Virus record (IMG/VR): IMGVR_UViG_3300023174_000038
Coordinates: 1-64,000 of that record
Direction: 5' to 3' (one strand)
DNA length: 64,000 bases
The translations under genes and the position numbers were made by a program. Under the pieces are notes generated by a model that saw only the letters and a program-made list of their open reading frames with translations, ran no database searches and was not told the DNA's origin. Within the stretch, counting starts at the first letter, position 1. Every line of letters starts with the position of its first letter. Below, one piece after another: positions 31,535 to 46,403 of this stretch.

Positions 31535-31543
31535 ACTGAGTCC

Positions 31544-32361
31544 TTATTTCTTTTCAGCTTTGTAGCGATCCATTAACTTTTTAGTGTCAATATTACTGTA
31601 TTCATTTTTAATAACGTAATTAATAATGCTTAACAGTTGTAGTGATTTAGGATTTACTGCTACAGCAATATTATCTACGCTATCACTTATTGTAATTGTC
31701 TTAGTACTAATTGCGGCGTCTGGTTTCTCAAAAGCAATTTTCTTAATTTCAAACTCATCACGGTACGCAGCCGCAATATCACCCCTTGTAACTTTATCAA
31801 TGATTACATCCCATTTATCTTCTGGTAGAAATACAGCATTAGGGAAATTGATACGGGCAAATGTGTCATAGCTTGAGTTACGAATAAAACTTATTTTACC
31901 GTTAAAATCTCTAATTACTTGATATGTTTCTTTGCCTTGACTATTTTGACTTAGCCATAAACGATTAACAACTAAACTTTGTCTTAGCTTAATATAAGGA
32001 TCACTGAACCTAACAACCTGTAATCTAGGGCCGGTTACTGACAATTTGCTAACAGCAATATCGGCACGTCCGTCTCGTACTTGTTCAACAACTTCAGCAA
32101 AACTTTCTGCATCTCGTCTAAATTGTACTGGAACTCCGAGTAATACTCCAATTCTTCGTGCAATTTCAACGTCAAGACCATGGATATCATCCTCACCGCC
32201 ACTGAAGAAGGGAGGGTTATCTTTTTTGGTCATAGCCACAATAAGAACGTTTGCTTTCTTAATTGCGGCTATATCAGGGGGTAGTGGTACCGTAGAAGTT
32301 GGTAATTGTGCGTGGACAACTGAACTAATCAGTACAAATAATAATAGTAGTAGTTTTTTCA
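31544..32361 (-). CDS. Periplasmic amino-acid binding protein (family 3 SBP)
   Basis: Signal peptide MKKLLLL, NPPFF, GLDVEIA, GRADIAVS.LSVT..R, RFSDPY; start near 32361 (track start 32380). Confidence 0.85.
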
Positions 32362-32404
32362 TAGTGTTGTATTTATGCAAGGTTATATGTCAATTGTTTT
32401 ACTA

Positions 32405-32430
32405 ATAAAAAAGAGCCCCACAGAGCCCTT
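32405..32430 (-). terminator. Intrinsic terminator
   Basis: GC-rich hairpin AAGGGCTCTGTGGGGCTCTT followed by a T tract. Confidence 0.65.
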
Positions 32431-32512
32431 AGTACTGGTTACGCAAATCCAGCGACACGCTATTTTGTGTCCGATTTAAATATAGCTAAAAACCAGCGTT
32501 TAACGCCAGTAA

Positions 32513-33160
32513 TTACTTTCCCAATAAGCTGTCAACCTTAGCCTCAGCAACATCTAAACGTGCTTCAATAGCGTCCAATATTGGATCTGCTGGAGTAGAA
32601 ACTGCTTCAACAATTTGTTGTGTTACTTCAGGAGAAACTTCTTCAACACCTGTAGCTGTAGCAATTACTTCAGCAACTGCGGCTGCTACTTCTTGTGCTA
32701 CTTCTGGGGCCGGAGTTGGCATATCAGCAACTGCTTGCATAATAGCTTCTGTAATTGCTACTGGATCAACTACAACTTCTGGCTCTGCTGTTACAACTGC
32801 CATAACTGCGGCTGCAACGATTTCAGCAACTTCCTCATGAGCAACGGCTGCTGCTTCAGTTTGTGCTATAACAACGTCAGCAACAATGTCAGCGGCTTCT
32901 GCATGGTCAGCACTTGGTGATAGTGCAACTACTTCTTCAACTTCTATCGGTGCATCTGCGGCTGGGGCAGAAATAATAGCATCAATATGTTCTTGAGTTT
33001 GAACAGCAATCAAGTGGTCAACTTGTACTTCAACTACGGATAATCTTGCGTCTAGTTCTTCAATGCTTATGGCACTGTCTGTGTTAACTGTTGTTCCAGT
33101 TAGGTTGGCTAATTTGGCTTCTACAGCTACTAATCTTGCGGCTAAATCTTCAAATCTCAT
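32513..33160 (-). CDS. Acidic Ala/Val/Glu-rich protein with three ARLxxxE coiled-coil motifs; likely -1 frameshift extension to 32460
   Basis: SD AAGGAG; ends G GGA AAG TAA followed by a hairpin. Confidence 0.75.
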   Translation of the reverse strand: MRFEDLAARLVAVEAKLANLTGTTVNTDSAISIEELDARLSVVEVQVDHLIAVQTQEHIDAIISAPAADAPIEVEEVVALSPSADHAEAADIVADVVIAQTEAAAVAHEEVAEIVAAAVMAVVTAEPEVVVDPVAITEAIMQAVADMPTPAPEVAQEVAAAVAEVIATATGVEEVSPEVTQQIVEAVSTPADPILDAIEARLDVAEAKVDSLLGK

Positions 33161-33206
33161 GAGTTTCTCCTTGTGGGGTTAATTGTGTGCCACCATGGCA
33201 CATAAT

Positions 33207-33241
33207 TATTTAACAAGTATTGTGTGACAATGATGTGACAA
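33207..33241 (-). promoter_or_regulatory. Pho-box-like direct repeat plus TAAATA
   Basis: TTGTCAC-ATCA-TTGTCAC, 11 nt, TAAATA. Confidence 0.7.
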
Positions 33242-33242
33242 A

Positions 33243-33953
33243 TCACGACCAATATTTAGATCCGTCTAAATTGTCCCAATATTTTTTATTGTTCCGATTA
33301 ACAAAATTCTTAACCAAATATTTACCCATACCAAGATATCCCATCTTTTTAAATCTACGACTATCCTGTCCAAAGTGATGCTTAATGATTCTAAATTTTT
33401 TTGGACTGTACTTTTTAGACAAGAAATAATCCTCAGATGTTACAAACTGTTCAGGGAATCCTCCATATTCAATAAACTTATCTCTACGGGTTAGCATAAA
33501 TGCCCCAACAGCAAATGGACTAAAGAATTTCAATGTATGATTTATTGTATTAAAAAGCGTAAATCCAATCATAGCTCTTGGGTCTTTATCATAAGATTTG
33601 ATGTTTAACCCAACAAGATCCAATTGTTTAGATTCCATAATATCTACTGCATCTTTTATTACATTATTCTTAAAGAAACGAACATCAGCATCAATGAATA
33701 AAATGTACGGCGTTGTGGCTAATTTAGCACCGTTATTTTTAGCAATAGAAACAGGGCCGCCACCAATAATTTCAACATTCAATGAATAACTATTATCTTT
33801 AATGACCTTTCTAGTATTATCAGTGGAACAGTCAGCAATGATAACTCTAGTATCACCAATATCTTGACTACGCAACGAATCTAACAAATGATGAATATAA
33901 TTTTCTTCATTCTTGCAAGGTACAACAATAGTAATTTTATCACTGAGTTTCAT
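33243..33953 (-). CDS. Family 2 glycosyltransferase
   Basis: TIVVPCKNEE, IIADCSTDNT, KNNGA, LFIDAD, GGF, SED; start MKLSDK at 33953. Confidence 0.9.
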   Translation of the reverse strand: MKLSDKITIVVPCKNEENYIHHLLDSLRSQDIGDTRVIIADCSTDNTRKVIKDNSYSLNVEIIGGGPVSIAKNNGAKLATTPYILFIDADVRFFKNNVIKDAVDIMESKQLDLVGLNIKSYDKDPRAMIGFTLFNTINHTLKFFSPFAVGAFMLTRRDKFIEYGGFPEQFVTSEDYFLSKKYSPKKFRIIKHHFGQDSRRFKKMGYLGMGKYLVKNFVNRNNKKYWDNLDGSKYWS

Positions 33954-34120
33954 TTTTTTATACACTTTCCTTCAATTTTAAATTGATTAAACTTTAACCA
34001 ATATGTCATACTTTGTAAACTTTGTTCACATGAGGATCGGTCCTGAAATGTCAGTTCTACCCGTCCCGGTATGTCCTTTGGGTCGTTCATATGAACTGCT
34101 AATATTAGTAATACCCACAT
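33950..34120 (-). CDS. 56-aa protein with hydrophobic N-terminus (MWVLLILAVHMNDPKDIPGRVELTFQDRSSCEQ...GKCIKK)
   Basis: Hand translation; SD GGAGAAGGA; ATGA overlap with the GT2 start; overlaps the tail of the upstream phosphoesterase gene. Confidence 0.55.
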   Translation of the reverse strand: MWVLLILAVHMNDPKDIPGRVELTFQDRSSCEQSLQSMTYWLKFNQFKIEGKCIKK

Positions 34121-34868
34121 TGTCCTTCTCCTTAGTCCAAGTAACTATTTCCCAACGTCCATCATGATGTTCTACTAATGCTGTACAACTTTCAACCCAG
34201 TCGCCATCATTCATATAGATAACACCATCTATAGTTTTTATTTCAGCATGGTGTATATGACCACATATCACACCATCAAAGCCACGCTTTTTACAATAGC
34301 CAGCAAGATTCTTTTCAAACTGAAACATAAAATCTATAGCTTTTTTTACTTTGTGTTTAAGGTATTTGCTAATACTAAAGTACCCAAAACCAAAACGATG
34401 ACGTATCCAATTGAACTTACTATTGAGCGATAAAATGAAATCATATGCTTTGTCTCCTAAAAATGCTAACCAAGGTGCTAGTCGTGTTATGCCATCAAAC
34501 AAATCACCATGTGTAACTAAATAATGCTTACCATCTATACCTATATGTTCTATTTGATTATGAATTTCTATAAGACCAAAACTAAAATCATATGGAATCA
34601 TAGGTCTTAAAAACTCATCGTGATTGCCAGCAATATAAACAACTCTAGTACCACGTTTAGCATGGCCTAACACTCTACGTACTACATTGGTATGGCTTTG
34701 TTTCCAGCGCCATTTGTTTTGCTGTATACGCCATGCATCAATAATATCACCTACTAGATAAAGTGTATCACATGTATTGTGCTTTAAAAAGTTATTTAAC
34801 CTATCAGCCTGACTATCTTTGGTACCTAAATGTACATCACTCACAAAAATAGAACGATATGTTTTCAT
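34026..34868 (-). CDS. Metallophosphoesterase of the PlcP/LpxH-like family
   Basis: SDVHLG, LVGDIID.W, GNHDE, HGDLFD, CGHIHH, YMNDGDWVESCTAL; start MKTYRS at 34868. Confidence 0.85.
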   Translation of the reverse strand: MKTYRSIFVSDVHLGTKDSQADRLNNFLKHNTCDTLYLVGDIIDAWRIQQNKWRWKQSHTNVVRRVLGHAKRGTRVVYIAGNHDEFLRPMIPYDFSFGLIEIHNQIEHIGIDGKHYLVTHGDLFDGITRLAPWLAFLGDKAYDFILSLNSKFNWIRHRFGFGYFSISKYLKHKVKKAIDFMFQFEKNLAGYCKKRGFDGVICGHIHHAEIKTIDGVIYMNDGDWVESCTALVEHHDGRWEIVTWTKEKDNVGITNISSSYERPKGHTGTGRTDISGPILM

Positions 34869-34872
34869 ATAG

Positions 34873-34907
34873 TATTTATTGAGAGATATGTGACAAATTA
34901 GTGACAA
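34873..34907 (-). promoter_or_regulatory. Pho-box-like direct repeat plus TAAATA
   Basis: TTGTCAC-TAAT-TTGTCAC, 11 nt, TAAATA, 4 nt, ATG. Confidence 0.72.
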
Positions 34908-34909
34908 TC

Positions 34910-35530
34910 TTATTTGTTAGCTAAAGGATTGTCCATAGCTTTTTGTATTTTGCTATCAACTTCTCTCTTTAGCGTCTCTACTTCACGGTTGATTTCTCTA
35001 CGTGCCGCAGTAAATTCACTGTTAATTTCTTTACGGGTTGATTCCATATCTTTGCGAATTTGATTAGCTTCGTTCCTTGCTCTCTCCAAGTCTTCTCGCA
35101 CAGCTTTACGCATATCACGCATTTCTGATTCTGTTTCACGTTGTGCATTCTTAACACTACGTTCTACTTGTTCAGTTACAGTTTCATTACGGCGAATATC
35201 GTTCTTTAAATCGGTTTTGATATCACGTGTGTAATCAGCACCCTTTTGACTATTTTCTTCAATAACTGCTAAACGCTTATCAAATCCAGATAAGTCTGGC
35301 GCAGAGTATTCAGCTATCTTTTTCTTCATACCCACATAGTCTTTATAGACTTCAAATGTTCCATAAAGTCCACCTAATATAGATGATACGATAGTAAACG
35401 CTACCATTAGTTTAGCTGGAGTAAACTCATACCCACCAATACTAATTACAGTATCTTTACTTGCGTATTTCTTAGCGGCGGCTTCAAGTTCATCAACTTT
35501 AGCATTTACGTTTTTAATTTCTTCACTCAT
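34910..35530 (-). CDS. Membrane-anchored coiled-coil protein
   Basis: One TM (LMVAFTIVSSILGGLYG), long R/E/K heptad region, ends DNPLANK. Confidence 0.75.
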   Translation of the reverse strand: MSEEIKNVNAKVDELEAAAKKYASKDTVISIGGYEFTPAKLMVAFTIVSSILGGLYGTFEVYKDYVGMKKKIAEYSAPDLSGFDKRLAVIEENSQKGADYTRDIKTDLKNDIRRNETVTEQVERSVKNAQRETESEMRDMRKAVREDLERARNEANQIRKDMESTRKEINSEFTAARREINREVETLKREVDSKIQKAMDNPLANK

Positions 35531-35541
35531 TTTATTTTCCT

Positions 35542-37209
35542 TTATTTATATTGTAGATTCACCAAATCTTGGTGTAGTTTATCGCTAGACAATTGACGCA
35601 AAACTCTTGCGTTGTCTACATTTACTTGATTTTTGTAAATCTCTTTTGGTGCATAGAACGGTGCATCTGCTAATGCAAATGAATATGCTTGATAGCCTGC
35701 AGGTTGTGTTGCCATTCTTGCTATATCAACACCGCCGGCTAATTCATTTGGCTGAACATTTCTATTCACTGTTTCTGTCTTTTGTTCTTGTGTATTTGTA
35801 TTTTGTACAATTGGTCTTTCTTCAATTGCATCATTCAATACTGAACGTGAACCCATTTTAATACCTTCATTCTGAGGTACTTCTATTTCAGGAGTAGTAG
35901 CATTACGACCCTGCGGTGATTGTAAACTATACATTTCAGTTGATCCAAATGAAACATTATTACTCATTGTATTATTAGGATCAGAAAATATAGTTTGAGT
36001 TGGTGAACGTAGTCCTCCAAGATTGATTACACTAGTCTGTGTAGTATTTACAATAGCAACAATAGATGATTGTGAGGATGTATTTATTTGTGTAGTTGAT
36101 GATCCAGTAGTTGTCATACTGCTAGTAACACTTTGTGCAGTTAGTGAACCAGCAACTGATTCTGCTTGTTCTCGTGCTTGCTGTGCATCTTTTGCGGCGG
36201 CTGACTCTGCTGCCTGAACAACTGCCTTAGCTTCATTGCCTATTCTAGTTTGGTTACTACTAATCATACTTAATACATTACCTAGACTAGGACCGGCTTT
36301 ACTATCATCTTTAGCAGATTTATTTTCACTAGGACGAGGCTGAGATCCTGCAGGAGGAGGATTTCCTGGCGGGGGAAGGGGCCCTGCTTGTTGAGAACCA
36401 TTAGGTGGGGGAGGACTACCTGGGGGAGGAGGTGGAGGTGCGCCATCTTCTGGTGGAGGTGGGGGAGGTGCATCCGCTACTGCTACTGGAGTAGGTGCTA
36501 ATTTAGCAAGAGCATCTGAGTAACCTCTACAACTAGGTGAGTATAATGGGTTAGTAGCACAAGGGTCAACACTATACTTCAAACTAAAATTTACATTAAT
36601 AATTTCAGGACCATATGGTCCAACCCAGTAGTTGTTGTCTCTTCCCACAAATCCATACTGAGCATTACCTAAATCAGGAGTAGCATATGCTGACTTAAAT
36701 GTTTCTGACCAATAGAACTGAGTCCAACCATATCTACGATTTACATCATAGTTGTATGCTTCTACTACCTTTGTGTTTGTGTTGTTGTATATGTTTACAT
36801 AAGCCTTTAGATAATCTTGTCTGCCATCATCCCATCCATTACCGTTCTTAGCAGTAAAGCCAAAGTTAAAACCATTCACTTGTAATCCTGTGCCACTATT
36901 AGGTAGCGCATTTTTAATAGCAACAGTTTGATTTAAGTCTGTTAGTCCATATGAAAAATTAATGACATTAGACCCTGCGCCCCAGGCGGCAACTCTGGGC
37001 AATGGACCACAATAACCAGGGCCGCCCGGCTCCCAACATGTAAGCTGTTGACCAATAGTACCGGCATTTTGCCATGTACTTGTAGTAGCTGTGGCATTAC
37101 TGGTAAAATTGACCAAATTACCAGTTGTTGTTACATCCTGACTATTAGAATATCTTATTGACAATAAGACCAAGAACAGCCCCAATGCCAATTTTCTTAT
37201 AAGTGTCAT
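35542..37209 (-). CDS. Secreted/surface protein with a beta-rich N-domain, Pro-rich linker and low-complexity stalk
   Basis: Signal peptide; DPCATNPLYSPSC; PPPPPP runs. Confidence 0.75.
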   Translation of the reverse strand: MTLIRKLALGLFLVLLSIRYSNSQDVTTTGNLVNFTSNATATTSTWQNAGTIGQQLTCWEPGGPGYCGPLPRVAAWGAGSNVINFSYGLTDLNQTVAIKNALPNSGTGLQVNGFNFGFTAKNGNGWDDGRQDYLKAYVNIYNNTNTKVVEAYNYDVNRRYGWTQFYWSETFKSAYATPDLGNAQYGFVGRDNNYWVGPYGPEIINVNFSLKYSVDPCATNPLYSPSCRGYSDALAKLAPTPVAVADAPPPPPPEDGAPPPPPPGSPPPPNGSQQAGPLPPPGNPPPAGSQPRPSENKSAKDDSKAGPSLGNVLSMISSNQTRIGNEAKAVVQAAESAAAKDAQQAREQAESVAGSLTAQSVTSSMTTTGSSTTQINTSSQSSIVAIVNTTQTSVINLGGLRSPTQTIFSDPNNTMSNNVSFGSTEMYSLQSPQGRNATTPEIEVPQNEGIKMGSRSVLNDAIEERPIVQNTNTQEQKTETVNRNVQPNELAGGVDIARMATQPAGYQAYSFALADAPFYAPKEIYKNQVNVDNARVLRQLSSDKLHQDLVNLQYK

Positions 37210-38287
37210 CTATCTTTTCCTCATCCATTTTTGGAATCTTGTCTGGATTAGCTTCCCACTGTGCTTTAGCTTGCTCACCAATCTTACCTTCATATGGACA
37301 AGGTGTGCCGGCTGCTAACATAGCATCAAATACACGACGGTCTTGACACATAGTAGCAACAGCGGCTACTTTCATACCCATATCATATAGTGTCTTAGAT
37401 AACTTTAATCGTTCACAATTCATATCACGTATTGTTCCACCTGAACTTACACCAAACACTTGTGTTTGTACACTACCTGAACTTCCTGTTGAACAAAGGT
37501 CAGCATTACCACCTGATAACATAGAAGGAGCTACAGCAGTAGGTGGAGGTTGAATCACACGTTGGGTAATTTCAGTCTGATTAATATTCTTGTTAGTTAA
37601 TTCACCTTGTTGAATATTTGTATTAACTGAATTGTTTTGATTTATATTATTATTAGTGGAAGTACTAGTACTAGTTGATGTGTTAATATTACGGTTAGTC
37701 ATATCACCCGTATTAACATTGTTATTAGTAGCTGTACTTGTACTAACATTGTTATTGTTATTAGTAGCCGTACTTGCACTAACATTGTTGTTATTGTATG
37801 TCATCGTACCAGTATTTTCGTTCTTATTAATATTGGTATTATTACTTGTACTCGTACTAACATTGTTATTGTTATAAGTCATAGTACCAGTATTGACATT
37901 GTTATTATTATATGTCATTGTACCAGTATTTTCATTTTTATTAATATTTGTAACAGTTCCACTCTGAATATTATTGTTTGTGTTTACACTAGTGCTAGAA
38001 CTATTGTTATTATTAGTATTTGTACTAGTACTATTAACAGCACTGGTACTATTGCTATTGCTGTTACTGACTGTATTACTGTTTGAAGTAACCGTACTAG
38101 TGCTATTACTTGTACTGTTTGTATCAACTAAACTTTTGGAATCATACCCGCCTTGATTGATTAATGTACTTGTACCTGTGGTTGTACCACCGCTGGAACT
38201 TGATGTGGTAGTAGTTTGTGCTTGTGTAGTGAATGCCATACCCAGCAAGGCAACTATAGCGAGAATCTTTTTCATTTTTATTATCAT
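37145..38287 (-). CDS. Secreted Asn/Thr/Ser-repeat protein with a Cys-containing C-terminal domain
   Basis: Signal peptide (MKKILAIV...AQA); NTGTMTYNNNNV repeats; PPPTAVAP...C..CERLKLSK..MCQD..PCP. Confidence 0.75.
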   Translation of the reverse strand: MIIKMKKILAIVALLGMAFTTQAQTTTTSSSSGGTTTGTSTLINQGGYDSKSLVDTNSTSNSTSTVTSNSNTVSNSNSNSTSAVNSTSTNTNNNNSSSTSVNTNNNIQSGTVTNINKNENTGTMTYNNNNVNTGTMTYNNNNVSTSTSNNTNINKNENTGTMTYNNNNVSASTATNNNNNVSTSTATNNNVNTGDMTNRNINTSTSTSTSTNNNINQNNSVNTNIQQGELTNKNINQTEITQRVIQPPPTAVAPSMLSGGNADLCSTGSSGSVQTQVFGVSSGGTIRDMNCERLKLSKTLYDMGMKVAAVATMCQDRRVFDAMLAAGTPCPYEGKIGEQAKAQWEANPDKIPKMDEEKIDDTYKKIGIGAVLGLIVNKIF

Positions 38288-38347
38288 CCTCTAGAGATAG
38301 TATTTATTTGCTTATTAGTTGAGAAATATCACACTTTATTAAATAGG

Positions 38348-38367
38348 AAAGGCTCCTAAGAGCCTTT
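38348..38367 (-). terminator. Terminator hairpin ending the tmRNA coding piece
   Basis: AAAGGCTC-TTAG-GAGCCTTT, identical to 27946-27965. Confidence 0.7.
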
Positions 38368-38681
38368 ACTGAGTTTCTGTTACGAGGTATGTCTTACCCT
38401 AGGCTGCGTTTAGGCTGCCAATGCGAACTGTGAGTCGTTTGCGTTTACTTTTTTTGCTTCTACGGCCGAGTTCCCCCAACCCTAACGGCTTCTGCTTTGC
38501 CGAGCGCCTAATCTTAACTACTATCCTGTCGGTCGATCCCAAGTCACCCCCATCATAAAAACACAATACCAAAGTAAATTTACACGGAATACCAAAGTAA
38601 ATTTATGCTCTTATGGTGGAGGTGGGGAGAATTGAACTCCCGTGTCGCCAGTGTTTCCTAAGCAGGTTTACGCTGTTCTTA
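38368..38681 (-). ncRNA. ssrA: Two-piece (circularly permuted) tmRNA: acceptor piece about 38681-38614, intervening segment 38613-38552, coding piece from 38551; tag ANDSQFALAA at 38442-38410
   Basis: T-arm GGGAG-TTCAATT-CTCCC and CACCTCC-ACCA end; 5' GGGGGTG pairs with CACCTCC including the G3-U alanine wobble; tag frame GCA AAC GAC TCA CAG TTC GCA TTG GCA GCC TAA. Confidence 0.92.
38565..38605. repeat. 18-bp direct repeat (AATACCAAAGTAAATTTA x2, 23-nt period) in the tmRNA intervening segment
   Basis: 38565-38582 identical to 38588-38605. Confidence 0.9.
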
Positions 38682-39314
38682 CTATTTAGTCAACCTACCC
38701 CTAGATAGATTGAATAAAGTAATTTTATCATCATCTGGTTTTAAATAAAAGTTAATTTGGGAATTATTATACCAATGTTTACCGTATGCATTACTATTCT
38801 TATTCTTTCTGTTGTCTCTCCATTCCGATGTAGGTATCCATCCGGATGGAATTTCATTTTTGTAGTACATTTTACGATTAACTAATTCAACTGACGATTT
38901 TTCTACACACCAAACTTTTCCAAAATTAGAGTTATTTTCTTTTTGTTGGTGCTTTCTTTCTTTAAAAGTTTTATTTCTCTTTTCCATTGCAGATTGGGTT
39001 TTTGACAACTTACTTGCTCGGGCTTGTTGTTCTTGATTTATCGCAAAATTAGTTTTAGTTTGAACATTTTTAAATGGATTAGGATGTAATTGTCTGCATT
39101 TTTTACCAGCTTCACTTTGTCTAATTTTTACTAATTCTTCTTTAGGACTTAATTTTGCTAAACCCTGCCATGCAACATAATCTTGCCAACGACCATATTC
39201 TTCGTATAACTTGCGATGTGCCTCTGCATGTTCATCAATAGATAATTCTATAAGGTTCCTAGGATCATCTGTCCCGCCTGCGTGTTTAGGAATAATATGG
39301 TGTTTATGGCTCAT
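38682..39314 (-). mobile_element. Free-standing HNH homing endonuclease
   Basis: HHIIPKHAGGTDDPRNLIEL...EHAEAH; two NS(N)xxGKxW repeats; own ATAAATA 5 nt before ATG 39314. Confidence 0.85.
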
Positions 39315-39332
39315 GCAAGTATTTATGCCTGC

Positions 39333-39381
39333 CGCACCCCCGTCCAAGACACTTTTCTCTTTGCTTCATACAGCAATAACT
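39333..39381 (-). pseudogene. Truncated relic of a second tmRNA acceptor piece
   Basis: TAAATA (39394-39389), then GCTGTATGAAGCAAAGAGAAAAGTGTCTTGGACGGGGGTGCG breaking off in the presumed T-loop at the HNH promoter. Confidence 0.55.
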
Positions 39382-42300
39382 TCAATTGTATTTAGTATTA
39401 AAATACTCTTTTAACCAAGGCCAATCATAACTTAGTCGTAATTTATCTAACTCACCATTGACTGATTCATAGTATTCTACAGCATGTTGAGCACCTTGTA
39501 TACTATATTGGGCATAGTCTCCTTCACCAACTGTTGTCCATACTTTCAATCTGTGTCTACTAATAGCACTATCATCTAATCGTAACTTAATAGCTTCACG
39601 GAAACTAGTGCGCCATGTACTAAACTCATCTGTATTATATTTTGCTACACCTGAATTAATCTCAACAACTTCATGCTCACTATCCAATGTAAAGTCTAGA
39701 CCTTTACCCATATTACCTAATGTAATCTGTTTATTGTATGCAATCATGGCTTGGTGACCATATACTAATCCATTAACAGGGTTACTTGCATAGAAGATAT
39801 AATGTTTAGGTACTTGTAATCTATCAGGTTGCCATGAGAAATCAAACTTACTATTGACTTTTAACTTAGCAAATACAGTAAACATCCAAGATGTTTGACT
39901 AGCAATTGCGGTTGCATGATAGGCAGCAACACGACCATTGACCCCATCAACTCTAACAACACGATTTTTCAGCCCTTTAGTCACGTTCAGTAAGTGTTCG
40001 TAGTTCTCGTCAGCTATGGCTTCACCGTTACTTAGGAAGACTATATCCAGCGGCTTTGACTGTCCCATCTTTGTTGATTTAGCAATATATGGATAATCAT
40101 ACAATTCTTTCTCAACATGATCGTTAGCTTCTTTGGGTACAACAATACGTGTGCCTCCCATATTCGTAATCAATATATTCTTAGATTCAATAGACCACAT
40201 ACTGATTGGTTCATCATTAATGTCTGGTGCGATTAAATTATCACTTGTAGTAAACACAGCATAAGGGAAGTTATAACTATGTTTTTTGAAATTCAAATGT
40301 GTATCAGCATCAGTAACAAAACTAGGGGCAGGCAAACGTTTTACTTTTTGATGCTGATTAAAGTTAATCTTCTCTATATTTTCTAGCTTATCCAAATCTT
40401 CTACAAGAATACGTAATTTGTTTACATTAATAAAGAATGTATCTCCAAACTTCTGTTTATCACTAGGGAATACATGTAACTGCTCCAATGAGAATGGATC
40501 ACATATATAAGTAAAGTCAAAGTTAGTGTAATCACATATTGAACTGCATACCCAAATGTAATGGTCCTTTTTAATGCCCAACTCATATAGCATATTCTTC
40601 AATGTAGTTAAGTAATCAGTTTCATACTTAATTGTATAAACGTTTTCACGTTTAGTCTTGCTTTCAATTAATGAAACAATATCATTAACTCCGTCATTAC
40701 CATAATCAATTAAGTAAACATCATACAAACAGTTACTAGCAACGGCACGTTTTGTTTTTACAAAGTTTAAGTTACTTAGGTGTTCAATAATTTTCACATA
40801 CTTTGTATCTTCCGCAAAGGTTTCTTTATTGACCATAAACGTACTACCCCAATGACTCCATTGTGTTCCAAACACATGAACCATTGTCATTTGCCACGGG
40901 TTAGGATAATAGTTAAAATCAAAGTTAGTGTAATCTAATTCGCTATTCAGTATCCAGCATAGTTCTGTAGTAGATTTATTGATACAGCGATTGATTGTGT
41001 CTACCCAACTGTGTAGATAACGTGTCTTTTGTAATGTAGGGAATTGTAACTTAAGCTGTTCAAATCTATTAGCTGATTCTTTATTACCTTTATCCACAAA
41101 GAAAGTATCAACTTGTTTGAATAACTTAGATAGATATTCTTCATCTAATTTTGTATTCTCAATAAAACTAATATCTCTATAACCTTTTTGCCACATCTTA
41201 CCGTTAACTAAGTAGGTTTGTGTTAACTCACTGTCAGGACTACCAAACGTATTAATATTAAATGCTTGTTCTTTAGTAGGTTTCCAACTAAAATCAAATT
41301 TAGTATAATTAATATTTTTACGTAATGCCCAAAATATTTCATTGCTATGTTGTTCTATTAATGCATCAAGTGTAGTTTCAATGTAATATTGAGGGTATTG
41401 AATAATACTATCTTCTGATAATAGTATATTTTCTAATAATACTATTTCTCCATCATTACCCGGTGTTATAAATTTAGGACCATCTTGCAAGTGAATATCT
41501 TCTAATATTGTACCAAATTGATAGATATAAGGAGGACTATATGGATCTGGGTGCCAACTAAAATCAAATATAGTTTTATCAAAACCTGCAGGTATGATCC
41601 AATTAGTAAAATTTTGTTTAAGTTTTGCTATAGGATAATCCATATATTTGACCTCAGTTGCGCCATTTGCAATATATCTTGGGCCACCTATCTTATCCCA
41701 TGTGTTAGGGAACTGATAGATATATGCAGGCTCAGTACTATCTGGATGCCAACTATAATCAAATTCTTCTATATTATCAGGTATATCCCAATTAGTTTTA
41801 TTAGGCAAATACTTTGATTTAATGATATCCATGTACTTTATGTTTGTATTTTCTGTACAGCCGGGAGCAGTAAACATAGGTCCATTTGTTTTTTGCCATT
41901 GTGTTCCAAATTGATAGAATAAAGGCTCATCATCTATATTTGGATGCCAGCTAAAATCAAACTCACTAGTATCTAGCCCTGCAGGTATAGACCAATGTGT
42001 CATATCTTGTTTAACTTTTGCTATAGGATAGTCTAAGTATTTTGTTTCTGTAGCACCCTCTACTGTAAATTTAGGTCCACCTGTTTGACTCCACGTACTA
42101 GGGAACTGATAGATATATGCAGGTTCTGTATCATCGGGGTGCCAACTCCAATCAAATGACGTTTGGTCTACATTACGTGGGATCAACCAATTTGTAAATC
42201 TCCATGCTACTACTTCTGCTTTAACAGCATCAATATATTTTAATTCTGTTGCACCAGGAACTATATAGCGAGGTCCCCCTGTCTTTTGATGTATAGTACC

Positions 42301-43524
42301 AAATTGATATATGTAAGGTGGGTCATGTGGATTAGGTTCCCAACTAAAATCAAAACTATTCTTTATAACATAAGGGGGTATTTCCCAATTGTCCGTGCAT
42401 GGTTTACGTGTAGCACGTTCTTCCATGTATTTGTATTCAGTTGCTCCTTCAACAACATATTGTATAGATATTTTATCTTCTGGCTTATTCCATTGATTGC
42501 CCCATGCATAGATATAGGGAGGACTCCACGGGTCAGGAACCCATGAATAATTTATCCCATCACTATTTTCTAAATGTTCAAATCGTGTACTGTTAGGTAA
42601 CAGTTTAGCTTTCATTGATTCATCATCAATAAACTTATATTCTGTTGCTCCTGGTACATGATATTCAACAGTTGGCATAATCTCTGCTGGATATTGCGTA
42701 TTACCAAATACATAAATAAATGCAGGTTCACGCGGATCAGGTCTCCAACTAAAATCAAAATTAAACTTATCTATAGAGTTCCATATTACCCACCTATCCC
42801 ATTCAGGTAATACAGCAACTGAGTTATCCATATACTTTCGGTCAGTAGCTCCTACACAATGATACTCTACTGTGGGTTTTAACTCAGCGGATATATATTT
42901 ATTACCCCAAGTATAGATATATGCGGGTTCACGTGGGTCAGGTCTCCAACTAAAATCAAAACTTGATTTATCTACCGCTTGTATTTCTATCCAGTTATCC
43001 CATTCAGGTATTAATTCTACTACCTCAGGCATGTATTTTACATTAGTTGCATCCTTGACATGATATTCTACATAATGTTTAATTTCAGTTGGATAGAATT
43101 TGCAACCCCATTTATATATGTAGGGCGGGTCATGTGGGTTTGGCTCCCAACTAAAATCAAACTTTAATTCATCAATTTTATCTAGCACCACCCAATTAGC
43201 ATTTTTTAAATTCTTTCTGAGTATAGGCTCAACATCAGCACGATATATAATTATGTCGCTATATCGGTGTGAGCATAGCCAAGTGCCACTATCTTTATTT
43301 TGTTTATTAGGCCATACATTGTTATGTTCACTTGTCCAAACTTCGTCATCGGGTAAAAAGTCAAAGTCCCAATCCCAATCAAAATTTGTATAATCACAAT
43401 ATTCATTGATTATCCAAAAATGGTCGGTGGTACATTGTTGTCTAGCATCGGCTAAATCAATTGCATGTTTTTCTCTGGGGTGGGCGTTGGGTTTACTACC
43501 GTAATAAAATACATCTCTAAGCAT
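39382..43524 (-). CDS. 1380-aa repeat protein with degenerate glycosyltransferase-like modules
   Basis: Nine roughly 67-aa FDFSWxPxPxxPxYIYxFG repeats; C-terminal domain (DIVFLSNGE..RVDGVNG..AYH..NPVNGLVYG..WRTSFRE..K) resembles 50931-51884. Confidence 0.75.
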   Translation of the reverse strand: MLRDVFYYGSKPNAHPREKHAIDLADARQQCTTDHFWIINEYCDYTNFDWDWDFDFLPDDEVWTSEHNNVWPNKQNKDSGTWLCSHRYSDIIIYRADVEPILRKNLKNANWVVLDKIDELKFDFSWEPNPHDPPYIYKWGCKFYPTEIKHYVEYHVKDATNVKYMPEVVELIPEWDNWIEIQAVDKSSFDFSWRPDPREPAYIYTWGNKYISAELKPTVEYHCVGATDRKYMDNSVAVLPEWDRWVIWNSIDKFNFDFSWRPDPREPAFIYVFGNTQYPAEIMPTVEYHVPGATEYKFIDDESMKAKLLPNSTRFEHLENSDGINYSWVPDPWSPPYIYAWGNQWNKPEDKISIQYVVEGATEYKYMEERATRKPCTDNWEIPPYVIKNSFDFSWEPNPHDPPYIYQFGTIHQKTGGPRYIVPGATELKYIDAVKAEVVAWRFTNWLIPRNVDQTSFDWSWHPDDTEPAYIYQFPSTWSQTGGPKFTVEGATETKYLDYPIAKVKQDMTHWSIPAGLDTSEFDFSWHPNIDDEPLFYQFGTQWQKTNGPMFTAPGCTENTNIKYMDIIKSKYLPNKTNWDIPDNIEEFDYSWHPDSTEPAYIYQFPNTWDKIGGPRYIANGATEVKYMDYPIAKLKQNFTNWIIPAGFDKTIFDFSWHPDPYSPPYIYQFGTILEDIHLQDGPKFITPGNDGEIVLLENILLSEDSIIQYPQYYIETTLDALIEQHSNEIFWALRKNINYTKFDFSWKPTKEQAFNINTFGSPDSELTQTYLVNGKMWQKGYRDISFIENTKLDEEYLSKLFKQVDTFFVDKGNKESANRFEQLKLQFPTLQKTRYLHSWVDTINRCINKSTTELCWILNSELDYTNFDFNYYPNPWQMTMVHVFGTQWSHWGSTFMVNKETFAEDTKYVKIIEHLSNLNFVKTKRAVASNCLYDVYLIDYGNDGVNDIVSLIESKTKRENVYTIKYETDYLTTLKNMLYELGIKKDHYIWVCSSICDYTNFDFTYICDPFSLEQLHVFPSDKQKFGDTFFINVNKLRILVEDLDKLENIEKINFNQHQKVKRLPAPSFVTDADTHLNFKKHSYNFPYAVFTTSDNLIAPDINDEPISMWSIESKNILITNMGGTRIVVPKEANDHVEKELYDYPYIAKSTKMGQSKPLDIVFLSNGEAIADENYEHLLNVTKGLKNRVVRVDGVNGRVAAYHATAIASQTSWMFTVFAKLKVNSKFDFSWQPDRLQVPKHYIFYASNPVNGLVYGHQAMIAYNKQITLGNMGKGLDFTLDSEHEVVEINSGVAKYNTDEFSTWRTSFREAIKLRLDDSAISRHRLKVWTTVGEGDYAQYSIQGAQHAVEYYESVNGELDKLRLSYDWPWLKEYFNTKYN

Positions 43525-43542
43525 TATATTACTTAGCTGGAT

Positions 43543-45096
43543 TTATTTGTTATAATTATTTAATATATCAGATAGCCATGGTATATAATTTTCTAATTTA
43601 TGACCTCTAATGTCATCTAACCTACGGGTATCGTCAGCTAGCTTTGGTAACAGATGGCTATTATCTTTAGCAAACATATAGTTGATTAAACCACTATAGC
43701 TATGCCTAAATATATTACCCATTTCTAGTCCATATTTTTCATCTATTTCTTTGTAAAAAAATTCATATGCTTCTCGTATTTGATTTTTTACATTAACGGG
43801 TAGTACTTGTATACTCATGGGAGACGGGCCCTCTAGTACGTGATAGCTAGGCGTTTTTCTAATTCTTTTATAATTTTTTTCTATTAACCATTTAGAAATT
43901 TCTAAAAAATGATATACATTGAATATACTTATAGTAGTAGATATTGTACCATAAATAGATTTAGTTGGATTATTACCTAACACATCTAAATTTTGTTCTA
44001 GTGCATCCCAAGTACTTGGATATCTTAGATAGTATGCCAAATCCTCAATTGCATCTATACTGCATCCTATTCCTACGGATCTGAACTCTTCCCATAAGTT
44101 ATATAGCTTATTTGGTATAGCAAACATATTTGAATTGTAATCCAAATGAACACGATTGCTATGACCCATATCTATAATTTTTTGTAATAATTTAAAATGT
44201 ATTTTATTAATTGTAGGTTCGCCGCCGGTAAAATAATATCGGTCAATATAGGGAATTAGTTTTTCAATTTGATTCCAGAATTCATCCGATTCATACCATT
44301 CAAAATCCGAAGAATCAATGGTATAATTATTATTTTTTTTGATTACATTATACGTTTTTCCCCCATAAAAAGACATAGGAGCTGAGGAAGGCTTTTCTCC
44401 CTCGTATGACATGAAAACAAAATCGTCATACCACAGACTGCTATCGGTCGGGCCGCAATATCTACATTTTAAATTGCATAAATTTCCAAAACGAATATCA
44501 ATATATTTTATTGGAAACTTTTCTATATCTATACTTCCATCATTAGCAGTGTTATCAATGAATCCTGTATGTCCGTATGTATTAATACTGTGTAATCTTT
44601 TACTAGATAAACCGGTGTCTTCTTCTTTCCAACATAAATTACATGACGGATGTTTTTCTCCGCGCAACATACTTGCACGTAATTCTTTAAATACTGTGTT
44701 ATTTCGTGATTGATTTATATCAGTATTTTTAACGTTTAACATTTCTCCGTTCTCTATTAGTTTACCGTACGGGTAGTATATCTGTTGACAACAAATTCTT
44801 AAATCTCCATTTTGTTGTATGCCAGTAGAGACCCATGGTATTGGGCAAAACGTTGAATTTTTTGGAAGGTCCTGCATTTGAGGATTTATTTGATTCAGTC
44901 TTGTTTTTGCTAGCTCAATTGAAGCTTCTGAGCAATGAGGATTTTTCATACCTGCTACTATAACTTCTGATTCAACATCATGTGTTATCATAGCTGTTAT
45001 TAATTCAGGAAAATCTGTAATTGTAATAAGTTCAACTCGTTCATTAGAATCAAAACAGTTGTGAAGTTTATTAAACCAATATTCACTGGTATTCAT
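43543..45096 (-). CDS. Radical SAM protein with an N-terminal Twitch/SPASM-like domain
   Basis: FCPIPW..GDLRICC..SCNLCW; CNLKCRYC; FTGGEP. Confidence 0.88.
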   Translation of the reverse strand: MNTSEYWFNKLHNCFDSNERVELITITDFPELITAMITHDVESEVIVAGMKNPHCSEASIELAKTRLNQINPQMQDLPKNSTFCPIPWVSTGIQQNGDLRICCQQIYYPYGKLIENGEMLNVKNTDINQSRNNTVFKELRASMLRGEKHPSCNLCWKEEDTGLSSKRLHSINTYGHTGFIDNTANDGSIDIEKFPIKYIDIRFGNLCNLKCRYCGPTDSSLWYDDFVFMSYEGEKPSSAPMSFYGGKTYNVIKKNNNYTIDSSDFEWYESDEFWNQIEKLIPYIDRYYFTGGEPTINKIHFKLLQKIIDMGHSNRVHLDYNSNMFAIPNKLYNLWEEFRSVGIGCSIDAIEDLAYYLRYPSTWDALEQNLDVLGNNPTKSIYGTISTTISIFNVYHFLEISKWLIEKNYKRIRKTPSYHVLEGPSPMSIQVLPVNVKNQIREAYEFFYKEIDEKYGLEMGNIFRHSYSGLINYMFAKDNSHLLPKLADDTRRLDDIRGHKLENYIPWLSDILNNYNK

Positions 45097-46403
45097 AGCC
45101 GTTCTCCTGTATGATGTTGTAACTCAGGAAAGGTTTTTTTGAAATCAGTATTTCTTTCTTTATCTAGTTTAATCAAATAACCCATATACCAGTTAACATC
45201 AAAGTCAACAGTTTCTTCTAATGCATTTTTAATTATACTTAACCTGTTATCAAATACATTTTTACAATCTTCCTGTAATTTTTGTGAAGATTTTAATGGT
45301 AATAATGTATTGTAATACCATTGCTCATACTCGGAAATTTTAATACGTAAATGTTCTTTCCATTCTTTACTAGCGGACCTTATTGAAAAGTACTCAGGAT
45401 ATAGTAAAACAATATTATGATAATCAGATTCCCAAATACTAGTGTTGTAAAACGTATGCGGGAAGAGGTCATTTACTAAAAAATATTCTAGTATATCTTT
45501 TATCCGATGTATATTCATCAGACTCCAGGTTGGAGTAATTACCCAATGACGATTACTTCCTGTTAAATTATCTTTTAATAGTTTAATATTTTTCAATATT
45601 TTATTTGCATCAGCTGGATAGCGTATGTAAAATAATCTATCCACATCAACTTCATCTAAACTTACTAATACACGTAATTTTTCCATGTGTTTCCAGTAAT
45701 CTAAAACGTCTGTTGATTTATAAGTCATTGTGGTTAAGTTAGTACTGTACACAAATTCTATTTCTCCTAATCTGTTTGATTCTTTAATATATTCTAGTAT
45801 TTCATAATGTTCAGGATGAAGTAAAGGTTCTCCACCAGCAAAATATATTTCTTCAACATTGTTTACTTGCGATTTTATAGTTTCAATGAAGCTTTCTTTA
45901 TGATTTTTACTGTTATTAAATTGATCCTCAGTATAATTAGGATCAATTGCCTTCATAATAGGTACCCATGAACTACTATACGTAGGATGGCACACTGTAC
46001 ATGCTAGATTACATAAATTGTTAAATCTGAAATCCCATTTCAAAAATTTCATACTACTCATTGTTCCATCTATAGCAGTATTATCTTCAATCAGTTCTTC
46101 ATAAAAATCTTTAAACCTATCATTAAAGCTTCGGCGTATTGTTGACGTACTTCCCCATTCTTCTTCTTTGTAGCATCTTGTACAATGTTTTGATTTTGTA
46201 TCGTTTAATATATCTCGTCTTAATTCTTTATAATTTTCATTGTTCCAAATATCTTGTATATTTTCTTTATACAAATTCCCCATACTGCCACCTAAACTGA
46301 TACAGCAGGGAAGTATATCTCCTGTTGGAACATTATGTATATGCATAAACGGAGCCATGCAAAATACTTTGCTTTCTTTAATGTGAAATGTTTTTTTAGT
46401 CAT
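45093..46403 (-). CDS. Radical SAM protein with an N-terminal Twitch/SPASM-like domain
   Basis: FCMAPF..GDILPCC..HCTRCY; CNLACTVC; FAGGEP; start MTKKTF at 46403 (track 46523). Confidence 0.88.
   Translation of the reverse strand: MTKKTFHIKESKVFCMAPFMHIHNVPTGDILPCCISLGGSMGNLYKENIQDIWNNENYKELRRDILNDTKSKHCTRCYKEEEWGSTSTIRRSFNDRFKDFYEELIEDNTAIDGTMSSMKFLKWDFRFNNLCNLACTVCHPTYSSSWVPIMKAIDPNYTEDQFNNSKNHKESFIETIKSQVNNVEEIYFAGGEPLLHPEHYEILEYIKESNRLGEIEFVYSTNLTTMTYKSTDVLDYWKHMEKLRVLVSLDEVDVDRLFYIRYPADANKILKNIKLLKDNLTGSNRHWVITPTWSLMNIHRIKDILEYFLVNDLFPHTFYNTSIWESDYHNIVLLYPEYFSIRSASKEWKEHLRIKISEYEQWYYNTLLPLKSSQKLQEDCKNVFDNRLSIIKNALEETVDFDVNWYMGYLIKLDKERNTDFKKTFPELQHHTGERL

What the first reader, a model, noticed from the sequence alone, without database searches (positions are those of the whole stretch)
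38368..38688. Phage-encoded circularly permuted tmRNA under a late-type promoter
The CCA-ending acceptor piece precedes the GGGGGTG coding piece. They are separated by a 62-nt intervening segment whose ends pair (ATAAGAGCATA/TGTGTTTTTAT) and which contains an 18-bp tandem duplication. The ANDSQFALAA tag has a ClpXP-type LAA end. Two-piece tmRNAs are known from few lineages, and a phage copy could sustain ribosome rescue or counter host RNA-cleaving defences.
Basis: partly seen in the sequence, partly recalled or inferred. Interest (0 to 1): 0.6.

Follow-up and report, generated by a model that had tools for sequence, protein, structure and literature searches.

The report
Jumbo-phage two-piece tmRNA gene
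A 349-kb freshwater T4-like jumbo phage carries an intact, circularly permuted (two-piece) tmRNA gene for rescuing stalled ribosomes; this kind of phage gene is already known and proves common, but here a homing-endonuclease gene has landed inside an older copy of it.

Summary
On the minus strand, 38677-38348, lies a complete permuted tmRNA gene: ARAGORN tmRNA*, tag ANDSQFALAA; Rfam beta_tmRNA 91 bits, tmRNA_permuted 90 bits. The order is acceptor piece ending CCA, a 62-nt intervening segment (IVS), coding piece, terminator. The IVS ends pair, and this stem covaries across 43 related genes. The "18-bp tandem duplication" is an 18-mer repeated with a 5-nt spacer.

The window is part of a 348.7-kb T4-like jumbo phage from lake metagenomes, with 25 tRNAs, a late sigma factor and no SmpB. 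ATAAATA is the genome's dominant upstream motif. The tmRNA has the one-mismatch variant CTAAATA where relatives have their -10 element, so "late-type promoter" is plausible but unproven.

It is not rare. Phage two-piece tmRNAs are published (Buchholz 2022; Al-Shayeb 2020), and I found over 90 viral contigs with this beta-type family, plus unannotated copies in phages Phosso and BUCT-ZZ01.

A 50-nt relic (39382-39333) breaks off in the T-loop. Homologous endonucleases abut tmRNA genes in two unrelated phages. Expression, processing and tagging remain untested: no RNA runs are on record.

The parts
38683..38689 (-). CTAAATA, a late-promoter-like -10 element (one mismatch to the genome's ATAAATA motif). 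It overlaps the endonuclease stop codon. Predicted start about 38677.
   Evidence: Motif enrichment; conserved NTAAATA at this position in the subfamily; late sigma factor present. Function is inferred.
38614..38677 (-). Acceptor piece, about 64 nt: inter-piece helix strands (AGCGU 38674-70, UUAG 38661-58, CUG 38651-49, CGA 38647-45), T-arm 38641-38625, acceptor 3' strand 38624-38618, ACCA 38617-38614.
   Evidence: Rfam alignments; independent family consensus fold, 98.5 % of cells paired, 19 of 26 pairs compensatory. The 5' end is inferred.
38552..38613 (-). Intervening segment (IVS), 62 nt: 10-bp terminal stem (38613-38604 with 38565-38556), UGAU leader 38555-38552 facing ACCA, and a loop holding the 18-mer direct repeat (38605-38588, 38582-38565).
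38368..38551 (-). Coding piece: acceptor 5' strand GGGGGUG 38551-38545 (G3.U70), D-loop-like ACUUGGGAUCGA, return strands of the inter-piece helices (38532-38503), hairpin CGGC/GCCG 38502-38486, subfamily hairpin 38481-38464, and an invariant post-tag segment 38399-38369.
38410..38442 (-). Tag reading frame: resume codon GCA, peptide ANDSQFALAA, stop TAA.
   Evidence: ARAGORN; sequence; the same tag or ANDxxFALAA in more than 90 related viral genes.
38338..38367 (-). Intrinsic terminator: 8-bp stem AAAGGCTC/GAGCCTTT, then a T-rich tail.
   Evidence: terminator stems covary among subfamily members.
38682..39314 (-). Free-standing HNH homing-endonuclease gene (210 aa from ATG 39314), with an ATAAATA motif at 39326-39320.
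   Evidence: phrog_655; Pfam HNH; similarity to T4 MobB/MobC; homologues abut tmRNA genes in L043 and L114.
39333..39382 (-). Relic of an earlier tmRNA acceptor piece: 50 nt identical to relative L308, cut off 4 nt into the T-loop. It is preceded by its own CTAAATA at 39395-39389.
   Evidence: depth spike at 39340-39456 in lake metagenomes; no Rfam hit on the fragment alone.

Best explanation
This is a functional two-piece (circularly permuted) tmRNA gene of beta-type architecture, carried by a lytic T4-like jumbo phage.

Inferred mechanism. A precursor of about 330 nt is made, either from the late-type element CTAAATA (start near 38677) or by read-through from the endonuclease gene, and ends at the terminator (38367-38348). 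It folds so that the 7-bp acceptor stem continues through ACCA/UGAU into the 10-bp IVS stem, giving a near-continuous helix of about 21 bp. Host RNase P cuts 5' of G38551. Endo- and exonucleases trim the 62-nt IVS back to CCA at 38614. The acceptor piece (about 64 nt) and the coding piece (about 200 nt) stay joined by the acceptor stem and four short helices. Host alanyl-tRNA synthetase charges the RNA through G3.U70. With host SmpB (the phage has none) and EF-Tu it enters stalled ribosomes. Translation resumes at GCA 38442 and adds ANDSQFALAA, whose LAA end is the ClpXP-type degradation signal. The likely benefit is to keep ribosomes free when infection produces many broken or stop-less mRNAs.

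Shown here: the gene anatomy, the selection on it, and the phage context. Inferred: transcription start, processing, charging, tagging and the benefit.

The present gene probably arrived or was kept together with an HNH homing-endonuclease cassette that replaced the rest of an older resident tmRNA gene from its T-loop onward.
For: Detection: ARAGORN and two Rfam models. Every element needed for function is present: 7-bp acceptor stem with G3.U70, 5-bp T-arm with loop UUCAAUU, encoded CCA, GGGAUCGAC motif, inter-piece helices, resume codon preceded by GUAAAC, a 10-residue tag and a stop codon.

Selection: in 41 unique related genes an independent consensus fold gives 98.5 % paired cells, 19 of 26 pairs with compensatory changes, and an invariant G3.U70. 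The IVS stem covaries. The subfamily hairpin and the terminator covary, and the post-tag 31-mer is invariant. The tag is kept as ANDxxFALAA in more than 90 viral genes.

Phage context: 348.7-kb virus record, Gp23 capsid, gp43/44/46/47 homologues, late sigma factor, 25 tRNAs, no integrase. The phage needs host SmpB: no PF01668 match.

Linkage: exact contigs across the endonuclease/tmRNA junction and across the IVS in runs from three studies.

Precedent: Melnitz and 53 other phage two-piece tmRNAs (PMC9004378); huge-phage tmRNAs (PMC7162821).

Relic and cassette.
Against: No RNA data exist for this phage, so transcription, two-piece processing, charging and tagging are all inferred. The gene has the lowest beta-model score of its family: 91 bits, 7 above the cut-off, against 110-150 for relatives. 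It has one A.C mismatch in the helix next to the T-arm, and it lacks the stem of the post-tag hairpin that the model expects, although that is a conserved subfamily trait. The promoter element is a one-mismatch variant. The host is unknown, so compatibility with host SmpB, AlaRS and the Clp proteases is assumed. Pseudoknot PK1 was not established.
Confidence: 0.8

Rival explanations
1. The RNA is made but acts as a decoy or modulator, not a rescuer. It would compete with host tmRNA for SmpB, AlaRS or ribosomes, or selectively tag host proteins for degradation to recycle amino acids, rather than sustaining general ribosome rescue.
For: A CDS-less tmRNA-like RNA of mycobacteriophage DS6A inhibits the endogenous tmRNA in E. 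coli (cited in PMC11915505). Buchholz et al. propose selective tagging of host proteins. The phage has no SmpB of its own, so it must draw on the host pool.
Against: The full tag frame with resume and stop codons is conserved across more than 90 viral genes, together with the complete tRNA-like domain. A pure decoy would not need the tag frame. Nothing in the sequence can direct tagging to host proteins specifically.
Confidence: 0.1
2. The gene is a passenger. It was dragged in by homing-endonuclease-driven gene conversion or picked up from a host or co-infecting phage, and persists as a homing-site carrier with little selective value to this phage. It may be decaying.
For: It sits directly behind a homing endonuclease, with a relic of a displaced copy. 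Its model score is the lowest in the family and the post-tag stem is lost. The neighbouring genes are shuffled among relatives. Four of five cultured relatives of the same capsid group lack a tmRNA.
Against: All helices and motifs are intact. The window's coding piece matches its own acceptor piece (AGCGU/GCGCU) and not the relic. The features that lower the score are invariant or covarying within a five-member subfamily, which indicates selection rather than decay.
Confidence: 0.08
3. The tmRNA is not the phage's own: it is host DNA from a chimeric assembly, or an attachment-site remnant of a temperate element.
For: tmRNA genes are classical integration sites. Local GC (45 %) exceeds the genome's 36 %.
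Against: Phage genes flank it on both sides and relatives show synteny. Exact contigs cross the junctions in three independent studies. No integrase was found. The gene is complete, with a phage-type promoter motif. The same family occurs in more than 90 viral contigs. Higher GC is normal for structured RNAs.
Confidence: 0.02

Closest known systems
Betaproteobacterial two-piece tmRNA (Rfam RF01850; described, from my own knowledge, by Sharkady and Williams 2004, a paper not held in the library)
   Same: Same gene order: acceptor piece, IVS, coding piece. Same inter-piece helices, an ANDxxFALAA-type tag, the post-tag loop motif CCUCGUAACAGAA, and a terminal hairpin. It is the best-scoring Rfam model.
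   Different: The score is only 91 bits against 169-296 in bacteria. CCA is fully encoded. The IVS is 62 nt with a 10-bp stem and a repeat-bearing loop, against 4-50 nt in the bacterial genes examined. There is an extra hairpin before the tag and no post-tag stem. It is carried by a phage.
Phage-encoded two-piece tmRNAs: Methylophilales phage Melnitz and 53 ARAGORN-permuted genes in public phage genomes (Buchholz et al. 2022, PMC9004378)
   Same: A complete permuted ssrA in a lytic T4-like aquatic phage without SmpB, proposed to sustain translation. Their Fig. 5 places phage genes in all three two-piece lineages.
   Different: Melnitz is alpha-type, lies behind an early promoter and is fused to a glutamine riboswitch. 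This one is beta-type, sits behind a late-type motif, lies in a 349-kb jumbo phage, and follows a homing-endonuclease insertion.
tmRNAs of huge phages (Al-Shayeb et al. 2020, PMC7162821)
   Same: Phages above 200 kb carry tmRNA among many translation genes, detected with ARAGORN.
   Different: That paper reports tmRNA together with SmpB and, in the passages read, does not discuss the permuted form, the IVS structure or endonuclease association.
Unannotated permuted tmRNAs found here in cultured phages: Sinorhizobium phage Phosso (PV764938.1:349596-350198) and Synechococcus phage BUCT-ZZ01 (ON615601.1)
   Same: Phosso is the nearest cultured relative by capsid (73 %) and also has a permuted tmRNA whose IVS ends in UGAU before G1. 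BUCT-ZZ01's gene scores best as beta-type, like the window's.
   Different: Phosso's is alpha-type with an IVS of about 390 nt. BUCT-ZZ01 infects a cyanobacterium and has the tag ANDETFSMALAA. Neither has an adjacent homologue of the endonuclease in the stretches examined.
Free-standing homing endonucleases of T4-like phages (Mob and Seg families; SegB in the T4 tRNA cluster, from my own knowledge) and group I introns with LAGLIDADG endonucleases in the tmRNA T-loop (PMC11915505)
   Same: An HNH endonuclease similar to T4 MobB/MobC sits beside or inside a tRNA-like gene. The break point of the relic is in the T-loop, the region where tmRNA introns insert.
   Different: There is no intron: no Rfam intron hit, and only about 21 + 44 non-coding nt flank the ORF. 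The insertion is followed by a whole replacement gene rather than the second half of a split one.

Membership tests
tmRNA (SsrA) | tRNA-like domain: 7-bp acceptor stem with the G3.U70 alanine identity pair, T-arm, 3' CCA | tested here: met
   GGGGGUG/CACCUCC with G3.U70, T-arm GGGAG-UUCAAUU-CUCCC, encoded ACCA. G.U is invariant in 41 relatives.
tmRNA (SsrA) | Internal tag reading frame with an alanine resume codon and a stop codon, ending in a protease-recognition motif | tested here: met
   GCA 38442 to TAA 38410, peptide ANDSQFALAA.
tmRNA (SsrA) | Pseudoknot PK1 upstream of the tag | tested here: inconclusive
   Hairpin CGGC/GCCG (38502-38486) matches the model and a second covarying hairpin follows. 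A pseudoknot pairing could not be established, and the tools used do not predict pseudoknots.
tmRNA (SsrA) | Alanylation, SmpB binding and trans-translation activity | not testable with these tools
   No SmpB in the phage genome. No RNA or biochemical data.
Permuted (two-piece) tmRNA gene form | The 3' tRNA-like half with CCA is encoded upstream of the 5' half plus tag, with an intervening segment between them | tested here: met
   CCA at 38614, G1 at 38551, 62-nt IVS. RF04321 at 90.1 bits against a cut-off of 47. ARAGORN tmRNA*.
Permuted (two-piece) tmRNA gene form | The two pieces are held together by base pairing that is under selection | tested here: met
   Inter-piece helices in the window. 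Family covariation: 19 of 26 pairs compensatory.
Permuted (two-piece) tmRNA gene form | The precursor is cleaved into two mature RNAs | not testable with these tools
   No RNA run holds the sequence. Read laying returned DNA contigs only.
Beta-type two-piece tmRNA (RF01850) | Score at or above the curated gathering threshold | tested here: met
   91.2 bits against 84, so marginal. Relatives score 110-150 and bacteria 169-296.
Beta-type two-piece tmRNA (RF01850) | Post-tag hairpin with loop CCUUGUUACCAAA | tested here: not met
   The loop motif is kept (CCUCGUAACAGAA), but five stem pairs are non-canonical in the window. The same stemless form is invariant in its subfamily.
T4-type late promoter | TATAAATA-like -10 element recognised by a gp55-type sigma factor, with no -35 element | tested here: inconclusive
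   Late sigma factor present (phrog_12791, E 1.6e-70). ATAAATA is enriched 13-fold upstream of genes. The tmRNA site is ACTAAATA, 6 of 8 to TATAAATA and 6 of 7 to ATAAATA, at the conserved position. No transcript mapping.
Free-standing HNH homing endonuclease | HNH catalytic motif, and a location beside a conserved target gene that lacks the endonuclease in relatives | tested here: met
   Pfam HNH 21.6 bits (cut-off 21.4) and phrog_655. Absent next to the tmRNA in relatives L308, L277 and L206. Cleavage activity not testable.

The most novel reading that the evidence does not exclude
Phage tmRNA genes may be a recurrent homing target, and their intervening segment a cargo site.

(1) A family of free-standing endonucleases shares one C-terminal domain, presumably DNA-binding, but carries either an HNH or a GIY-YIG nuclease. 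These enzymes would recognise the conserved tRNA-like part of permuted tmRNA genes, cut endonuclease-free alleles near the T-loop, and spread together with a cleavage-resistant replacement tmRNA gene, leaving relics such as 39382-39333.

(2) The covarying stem that closes the IVS would be a processing module whose loop tolerates insertions. In some phages the loop carries a translated 21-24-residue membrane peptide gene. Its ribosome-binding site lies in the stem and its stop codon is the UGA immediately before tmRNA nucleotide 1.
Probability: 0.4. Interest if true: 0.6.

Novelty: new member of a known kind. Interest (0 to 1): 0.4.

Why it matters
The gene itself adds one more well-resolved example to a known class. 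It shows that two-piece tmRNAs are a routine part of the translation toolkit of aquatic T4-like phages, including a 349-kb jumbo phage. Current records under-report them: the copies in phages Phosso and BUCT-ZZ01 are unannotated, one of them under a 'hypothetical protein' CDS.

Two practical points follow. First, the tmRNA subtype cannot be used to name the host: a beta-type gene sits in a cyanophage, and published Melnitz carries an alpha-type gene in a beta-lineage host. Second, the family offers natural material for studying how two-piece tmRNA precursors are processed, because it has a conserved stem and a UGAU leader with IVS loops ranging from 32 to 119 nt.

The endonuclease insertion with its relic would, if confirmed, show that selfish endonucleases exploit tmRNA genes in phages as they exploit tRNA clusters and T-loop introns elsewhere.

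Tried and rejected
- **Group I intron in the T-loop:** rejected. There is no Rfam intron or tmRNA_intron hit. Only about 21 + 44 non-coding nt flank the 633-nt ORF, and a complete acceptor piece follows, rather than a second exon.
- **attP or integration remnant:** rejected. No integrase, and the gene is complete.
- **Host inference from tmRNA subtype:** abandoned. Phosso matches its alpha host, but cyanophage BUCT-ZZ01 carries a beta-scoring gene and published Melnitz is mismatched. The most similar bacterial gene (L340, a genome of about 2.0 Mb, locus GC 0.40) could not be named.
- **'MAG' hits L129 and L178** (binned as Haliscomenobacter and a Lake Erken bin): probably phage contigs in bins. 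They have low GC and tRNA clusters, and the 6.9-Mb bin has another sub-threshold tmRNA-model hit on its main contig.
- **blastn of the window gene against 50,697 deposited phages:** no match.
- **RNA evidence:** no RNA runs hold the sequence.
- **Read laying joints** 38638>39339 and 38461>39354: these looked like endonuclease-free alleles, but contigs of other family members mapping at 90 % likeness explain them equally well, so they are not counted as evidence.
- **Sigma-70 scan near the gene:** nothing above shuffled expectation. TTGAC at 38693-38689 is too close to the TAAATA element to serve as its -35.
- **The 57-aa ORF 38399-38572** that overlaps the coding piece is taken as spurious.
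- **MFE folding of the whole precursor:** recovers the T-arm, the acceptor stem and the IVS stem, but not the Rfam inter-piece helices. Those rest on the Rfam alignment and family covariation.
- **Supplements of PMC11915505:** gave no phage breakdown. PMC516066 is not held.

Full report
**1. What is at the coordinates.** The feature lies on the minus strand. ARAGORN finds one permuted tmRNA in the window, at 38319-38707(-), with tag ANDSQFALAA. Rfam finds beta_tmRNA (RF01850, 91.2 bits, cut-off 84, E 3e-26) and the general tmRNA_permuted model (RF04321, 90.1 bits, cut-off 47, E 5e-16) at the same place, and nothing else in 64 kb.

Reading 5' to 3' on the minus strand:
- a CTAAATA motif, 38689-38683;
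- an acceptor piece, about 38677-38614, with T-arm GGGAG/UUCAAUU/CUCCC, acceptor strand CACCUCC and an encoded ACCA;
- a 62-nt intervening segment (IVS), 38613-38552;
- the coding piece, starting GGGGGUG at 38551, so that G3 pairs with U, the alanine identity pair;
- the tag frame, GCA 38442 to TAA 38412-38410;
- an intrinsic terminator, 38367-38348.

In the Rfam alignment all inter-piece helices can form in the window: AGCGU/GCGCU, UUAG/UUAA, CUG/CAG and CGA/CCG. There is one A.C mismatch.

The IVS is exactly 62 nt. Its ends pair over 10 bp (38613-38604 with 38565-38556). The 18-mer TAAATTTACTTTGGTATT occurs twice, with a 5-nt spacer (period 23), and nowhere else in the genome.

The end-pairing is not chance. 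I extracted 43 unique related permuted genes and anchored them on CCA and G1. In the register that starts right after CCA and ends 4 nt before G1, 9.28 of 10 positions pair. Every other register gives about 4.4, and swapping arms between sequences gives 5.92 +/- 0.23 (maximum 6.86 in 1000 trials). Each stem position shows three to seven pair types.

ACCA faces a conserved UGAU (A-U, C.A, C-G, A-U). The acceptor stem, this quartet and the IVS stem therefore form one long helix, and the minimum-energy fold of the precursor recovers it.

**3. What genome this is.** The window is the first 64 kb of a 348,701-bp IMG/VR virus record (CheckV 100 %, GC 36 %). It has:
- a T4-type major capsid protein (PF07068, E 5e-99);
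- homologues of T4 gp43, gp44, gp46 and gp47;
- a late-transcription sigma factor (phrog_12791, E 1.6e-70);
- 25 clustered tRNA genes;
- no SmpB and no integrase.

By capsid, the nearest cultured phages are the jumbo phages Phosso (73 %), Vibrio 2.275.O, PA5oct and the Rak2-like group, all with proteobacterial hosts. The DNA occurs in lake and freshwater metagenomes from nine studies. No RNA run holds it. Exact contigs cross the endonuclease/tmRNA junction and the IVS in runs from three studies.

**4. The promoter claim.** The most enriched 7-mer within 100 nt upstream of the 350 crude gene calls is ATAAATA: 81 regions against 6 expected. TATAAATA gives 19 against 1.5. The extended motif is (G)ATAAATA, at a median of 27 nt before the start codon. 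Together with the late sigma factor, this is a T4-style late promoter.

The tmRNA has CTAAATA, a one-mismatch variant that is itself 5-fold enriched upstream of genes. It lies where relatives have their -10 element. Many family members have TTGAC-N17-TATAAT there. The window's own subfamily all have NTAAATA 4-5 nt before the acceptor piece, and L277 has the consensus ATAAATA plus an upstream sigma-70 promoter. A start about 6 nt downstream would fall near 38677, just before the first helix.

"Late-type promoter" is therefore reasonable but unproven. Read-through from upstream promoters is also possible, because there is no terminator between the endonuclease gene and the tmRNA.

**5. How common and how known.** Al-Shayeb et al. 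2020 report tmRNAs in huge phages. Buchholz et al. 2022 describe the two-piece tmRNA of phage Melnitz. They count 53 ARAGORN-permuted genes among 402 phage tmRNAs, mostly aquatic, and place phage genes in all three two-piece lineages.

My scans agree. A pattern for the beta-type tag region also hit the limit, and 90 of the 92 ARAGORN calls in those contigs were permuted, in contigs of 33-45 % GC with tags ANDxxFALAA. These viral genes score 110-150 bits on the beta model.

In bacteria the same tag pattern falls almost only in Burkholderiales, where most genes are standard one-piece. Only 4 of 151 sampled genomes of that order have a beta-type permuted gene above the cut-off. One of these, L340 (a genome of about 2.0 Mb, locus GC 0.40), shares the phage-like design, with an encoded CCA and an IVS of the form AAAG...CUUU-UGAU. 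High-GC ones have IVS of 4-50 nt.

Two cultured phages carry unannotated permuted tmRNAs. Phosso's is alpha-type with an IVS of about 390 nt. Cyanophage BUCT-ZZ01's scores best as beta-type. The latter, together with Melnitz, shows that the subtype does not name the host, so I leave the host open.

**6. Is the window copy healthy?** It has the lowest beta-model score in its family. The deviations are an extra hairpin (38481-38464) and a stemless post-tag segment (38399-38369). Both are shared by a subfamily (L308, L277, L241, L273), in which the hairpin and the terminator stems covary and the post-tag 31-mer is invariant.

An independent consensus fold of 41 unique family genes with the IVS removed gives 98.5 % paired cells, 19 of 26 pairs with compensatory changes, and an invariant G3.U70. 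I conclude that the gene is under selection as a two-piece tmRNA.

The ORF just upstream (ATG 39314 to TAG 38682, 210 aa) is an HNH homing endonuclease: phrog_655, Pfam HNH, and similarity to T4 MobB/MobC.

A depth spike at 39340-39456 in the lake contigs led me to the sequence upstream of it. Positions 39382-39333 are 50 of 50 identical to the 5' part of relative L308's acceptor piece, with its own CTAAATA at 39395-39389. The match stops four bases into the T-loop (GGGGG-UGCG|), where the endonuclease cassette begins. This relic has the family-consensus sequence: 22 fetched loci share its 26-mer core.

The intact acceptor piece downstream is of a rarer type, and it is the one that pairs with the window's coding piece (AGCGU/GCGCU). 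The relic's GCUGU would need ACAGC, as in L308. So the endonuclease, together with a complete and matched tmRNA gene, replaced the rest of an older resident gene.

Relatives have no endonuclease gene at this spot. In two unrelated contigs, homologous endonucleases abut permuted tmRNAs:
- L043: HNH, 37 % identity over 226 aa. Its stop codon lies inside the acceptor piece, and AATTGCTGTATA is repeated on both sides of the gene.
- L114: a GIY-YIG N-terminus, with a C-terminal domain 50 % identical to the window protein.

This suggests, but does not prove, that the shared C-terminal domain targets tmRNA genes.

**8. Mechanism and rivals.** The best explanation (confidence 0.8) is a working two-piece tmRNA that uses host RNase P, 3' trimming enzymes, AlaRS, SmpB, EF-Tu and Clp proteases. 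Its likely role is to keep ribosomes available late in infection. The rivals are a decoy or modulator role (0.1), a selfish passenger of the endonuclease (0.08), and an assembly or attachment-site artefact (0.02). All functional steps are inferred, and only the anatomy, selection and context are shown.

**9. Verdict.** As a phage-encoded permuted tmRNA it is a new member of a known kind. The endonuclease insertion with its relic, and the structured IVS that carries variable cargo, are the parts worth following up.

Noticed in passing
window 39333-39395 (-) and 38682-39314 (-): A 50-nt relic of a second tmRNA acceptor piece is identical to relative L308 and has its own CTAAATA motif. It is truncated 4 nt into the T-loop by an HNH homing-endonuclease cassette, and the intact tmRNA gene follows the endonuclease gene.
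   Followed up: yes
L043:2789-3702 (-) and L114:4211-4758 (-): Homologous endonucleases sit directly upstream of permuted, alpha-scoring tmRNA genes in two unrelated viral contigs. L043 has an HNH enzyme (37 % identity) whose stop codon lies inside the acceptor piece. L114 has a GIY-YIG N-terminus with a C-terminal domain 50 % identical to the window's. The shared domain may target tmRNA genes.
   Followed up: partly
IVS of L206, L243, L258, L231, L235, L268 (relatives; not in the window): The IVS loop holds a mini-ORF preceded by AAGGAG in four of the six loci (L206, L243, L258, L231). It encodes a 21-24-residue hydrophobic peptide and ends at the UGA of the conserved UGAU just before tmRNA nucleotide 1. 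Between L206 and L243, 14 of 21 differences are at third codon positions, with 13 synonymous and 6 mostly conservative codon changes, so it looks translated. The ribosome-binding site lies in the IVS stem.
   Followed up: partly
PV764938.1:349596-350198 (L319/L329) and ON615601.1, about 116.9-117.3 kb (L347:1274-1704): Cultured phages Phosso (Sinorhizobium) and BUCT-ZZ01 (Synechococcus elongatus) carry permuted tmRNA genes that are not annotated in GenBank. BUCT-ZZ01's overlaps a 'hypothetical protein' CDS and scores best as beta-type although the host is a cyanobacterium. Phosso's has an IVS of about 390 nt.
   Followed up: partly
whole genome G000 (e.g. 86506-87417 for the sigma factor): (G)ATAAATA is the dominant upstream motif (81 of 350 upstream regions), a median 27 nt before start codons. 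It is accompanied by a gp55-type late sigma factor next to the gp46/gp47 homologues. TTGACA-type early promoters are also enriched (45 against 11 expected).
   Followed up: partly
L129 (contig of a MAG binned as Haliscomenobacter) and L178 (contig of a Lake Erken bin): These low-GC contigs, with tRNA clusters and phage-type beta permuted tmRNAs, sit in bacterial MAG bins. The 6.9-Mb bin has another, sub-threshold tmRNA-model hit on its main contig, so they are probably misbinned phage DNA.
   Followed up: partly
window 28000-47000 compared with L308, L206, L282, L203, L281: The tmRNA lies in a shuffled accessory region (glycosyltransferase, phosphoesterase, two radical-SAM proteins, a 1380-aa protein with no family match). 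The order and content of these genes differ among otherwise close relatives.
   Followed up: no
window 37234-37467 and 37819-37935: Contigs from lake run X4 show many internal skips and back-steps within ORF 37145-38287 (380 aa, phrog_20531, unknown function), and depth spikes there. This suggests a repetitive or hypervariable gene just downstream of the tmRNA.
   Followed up: no
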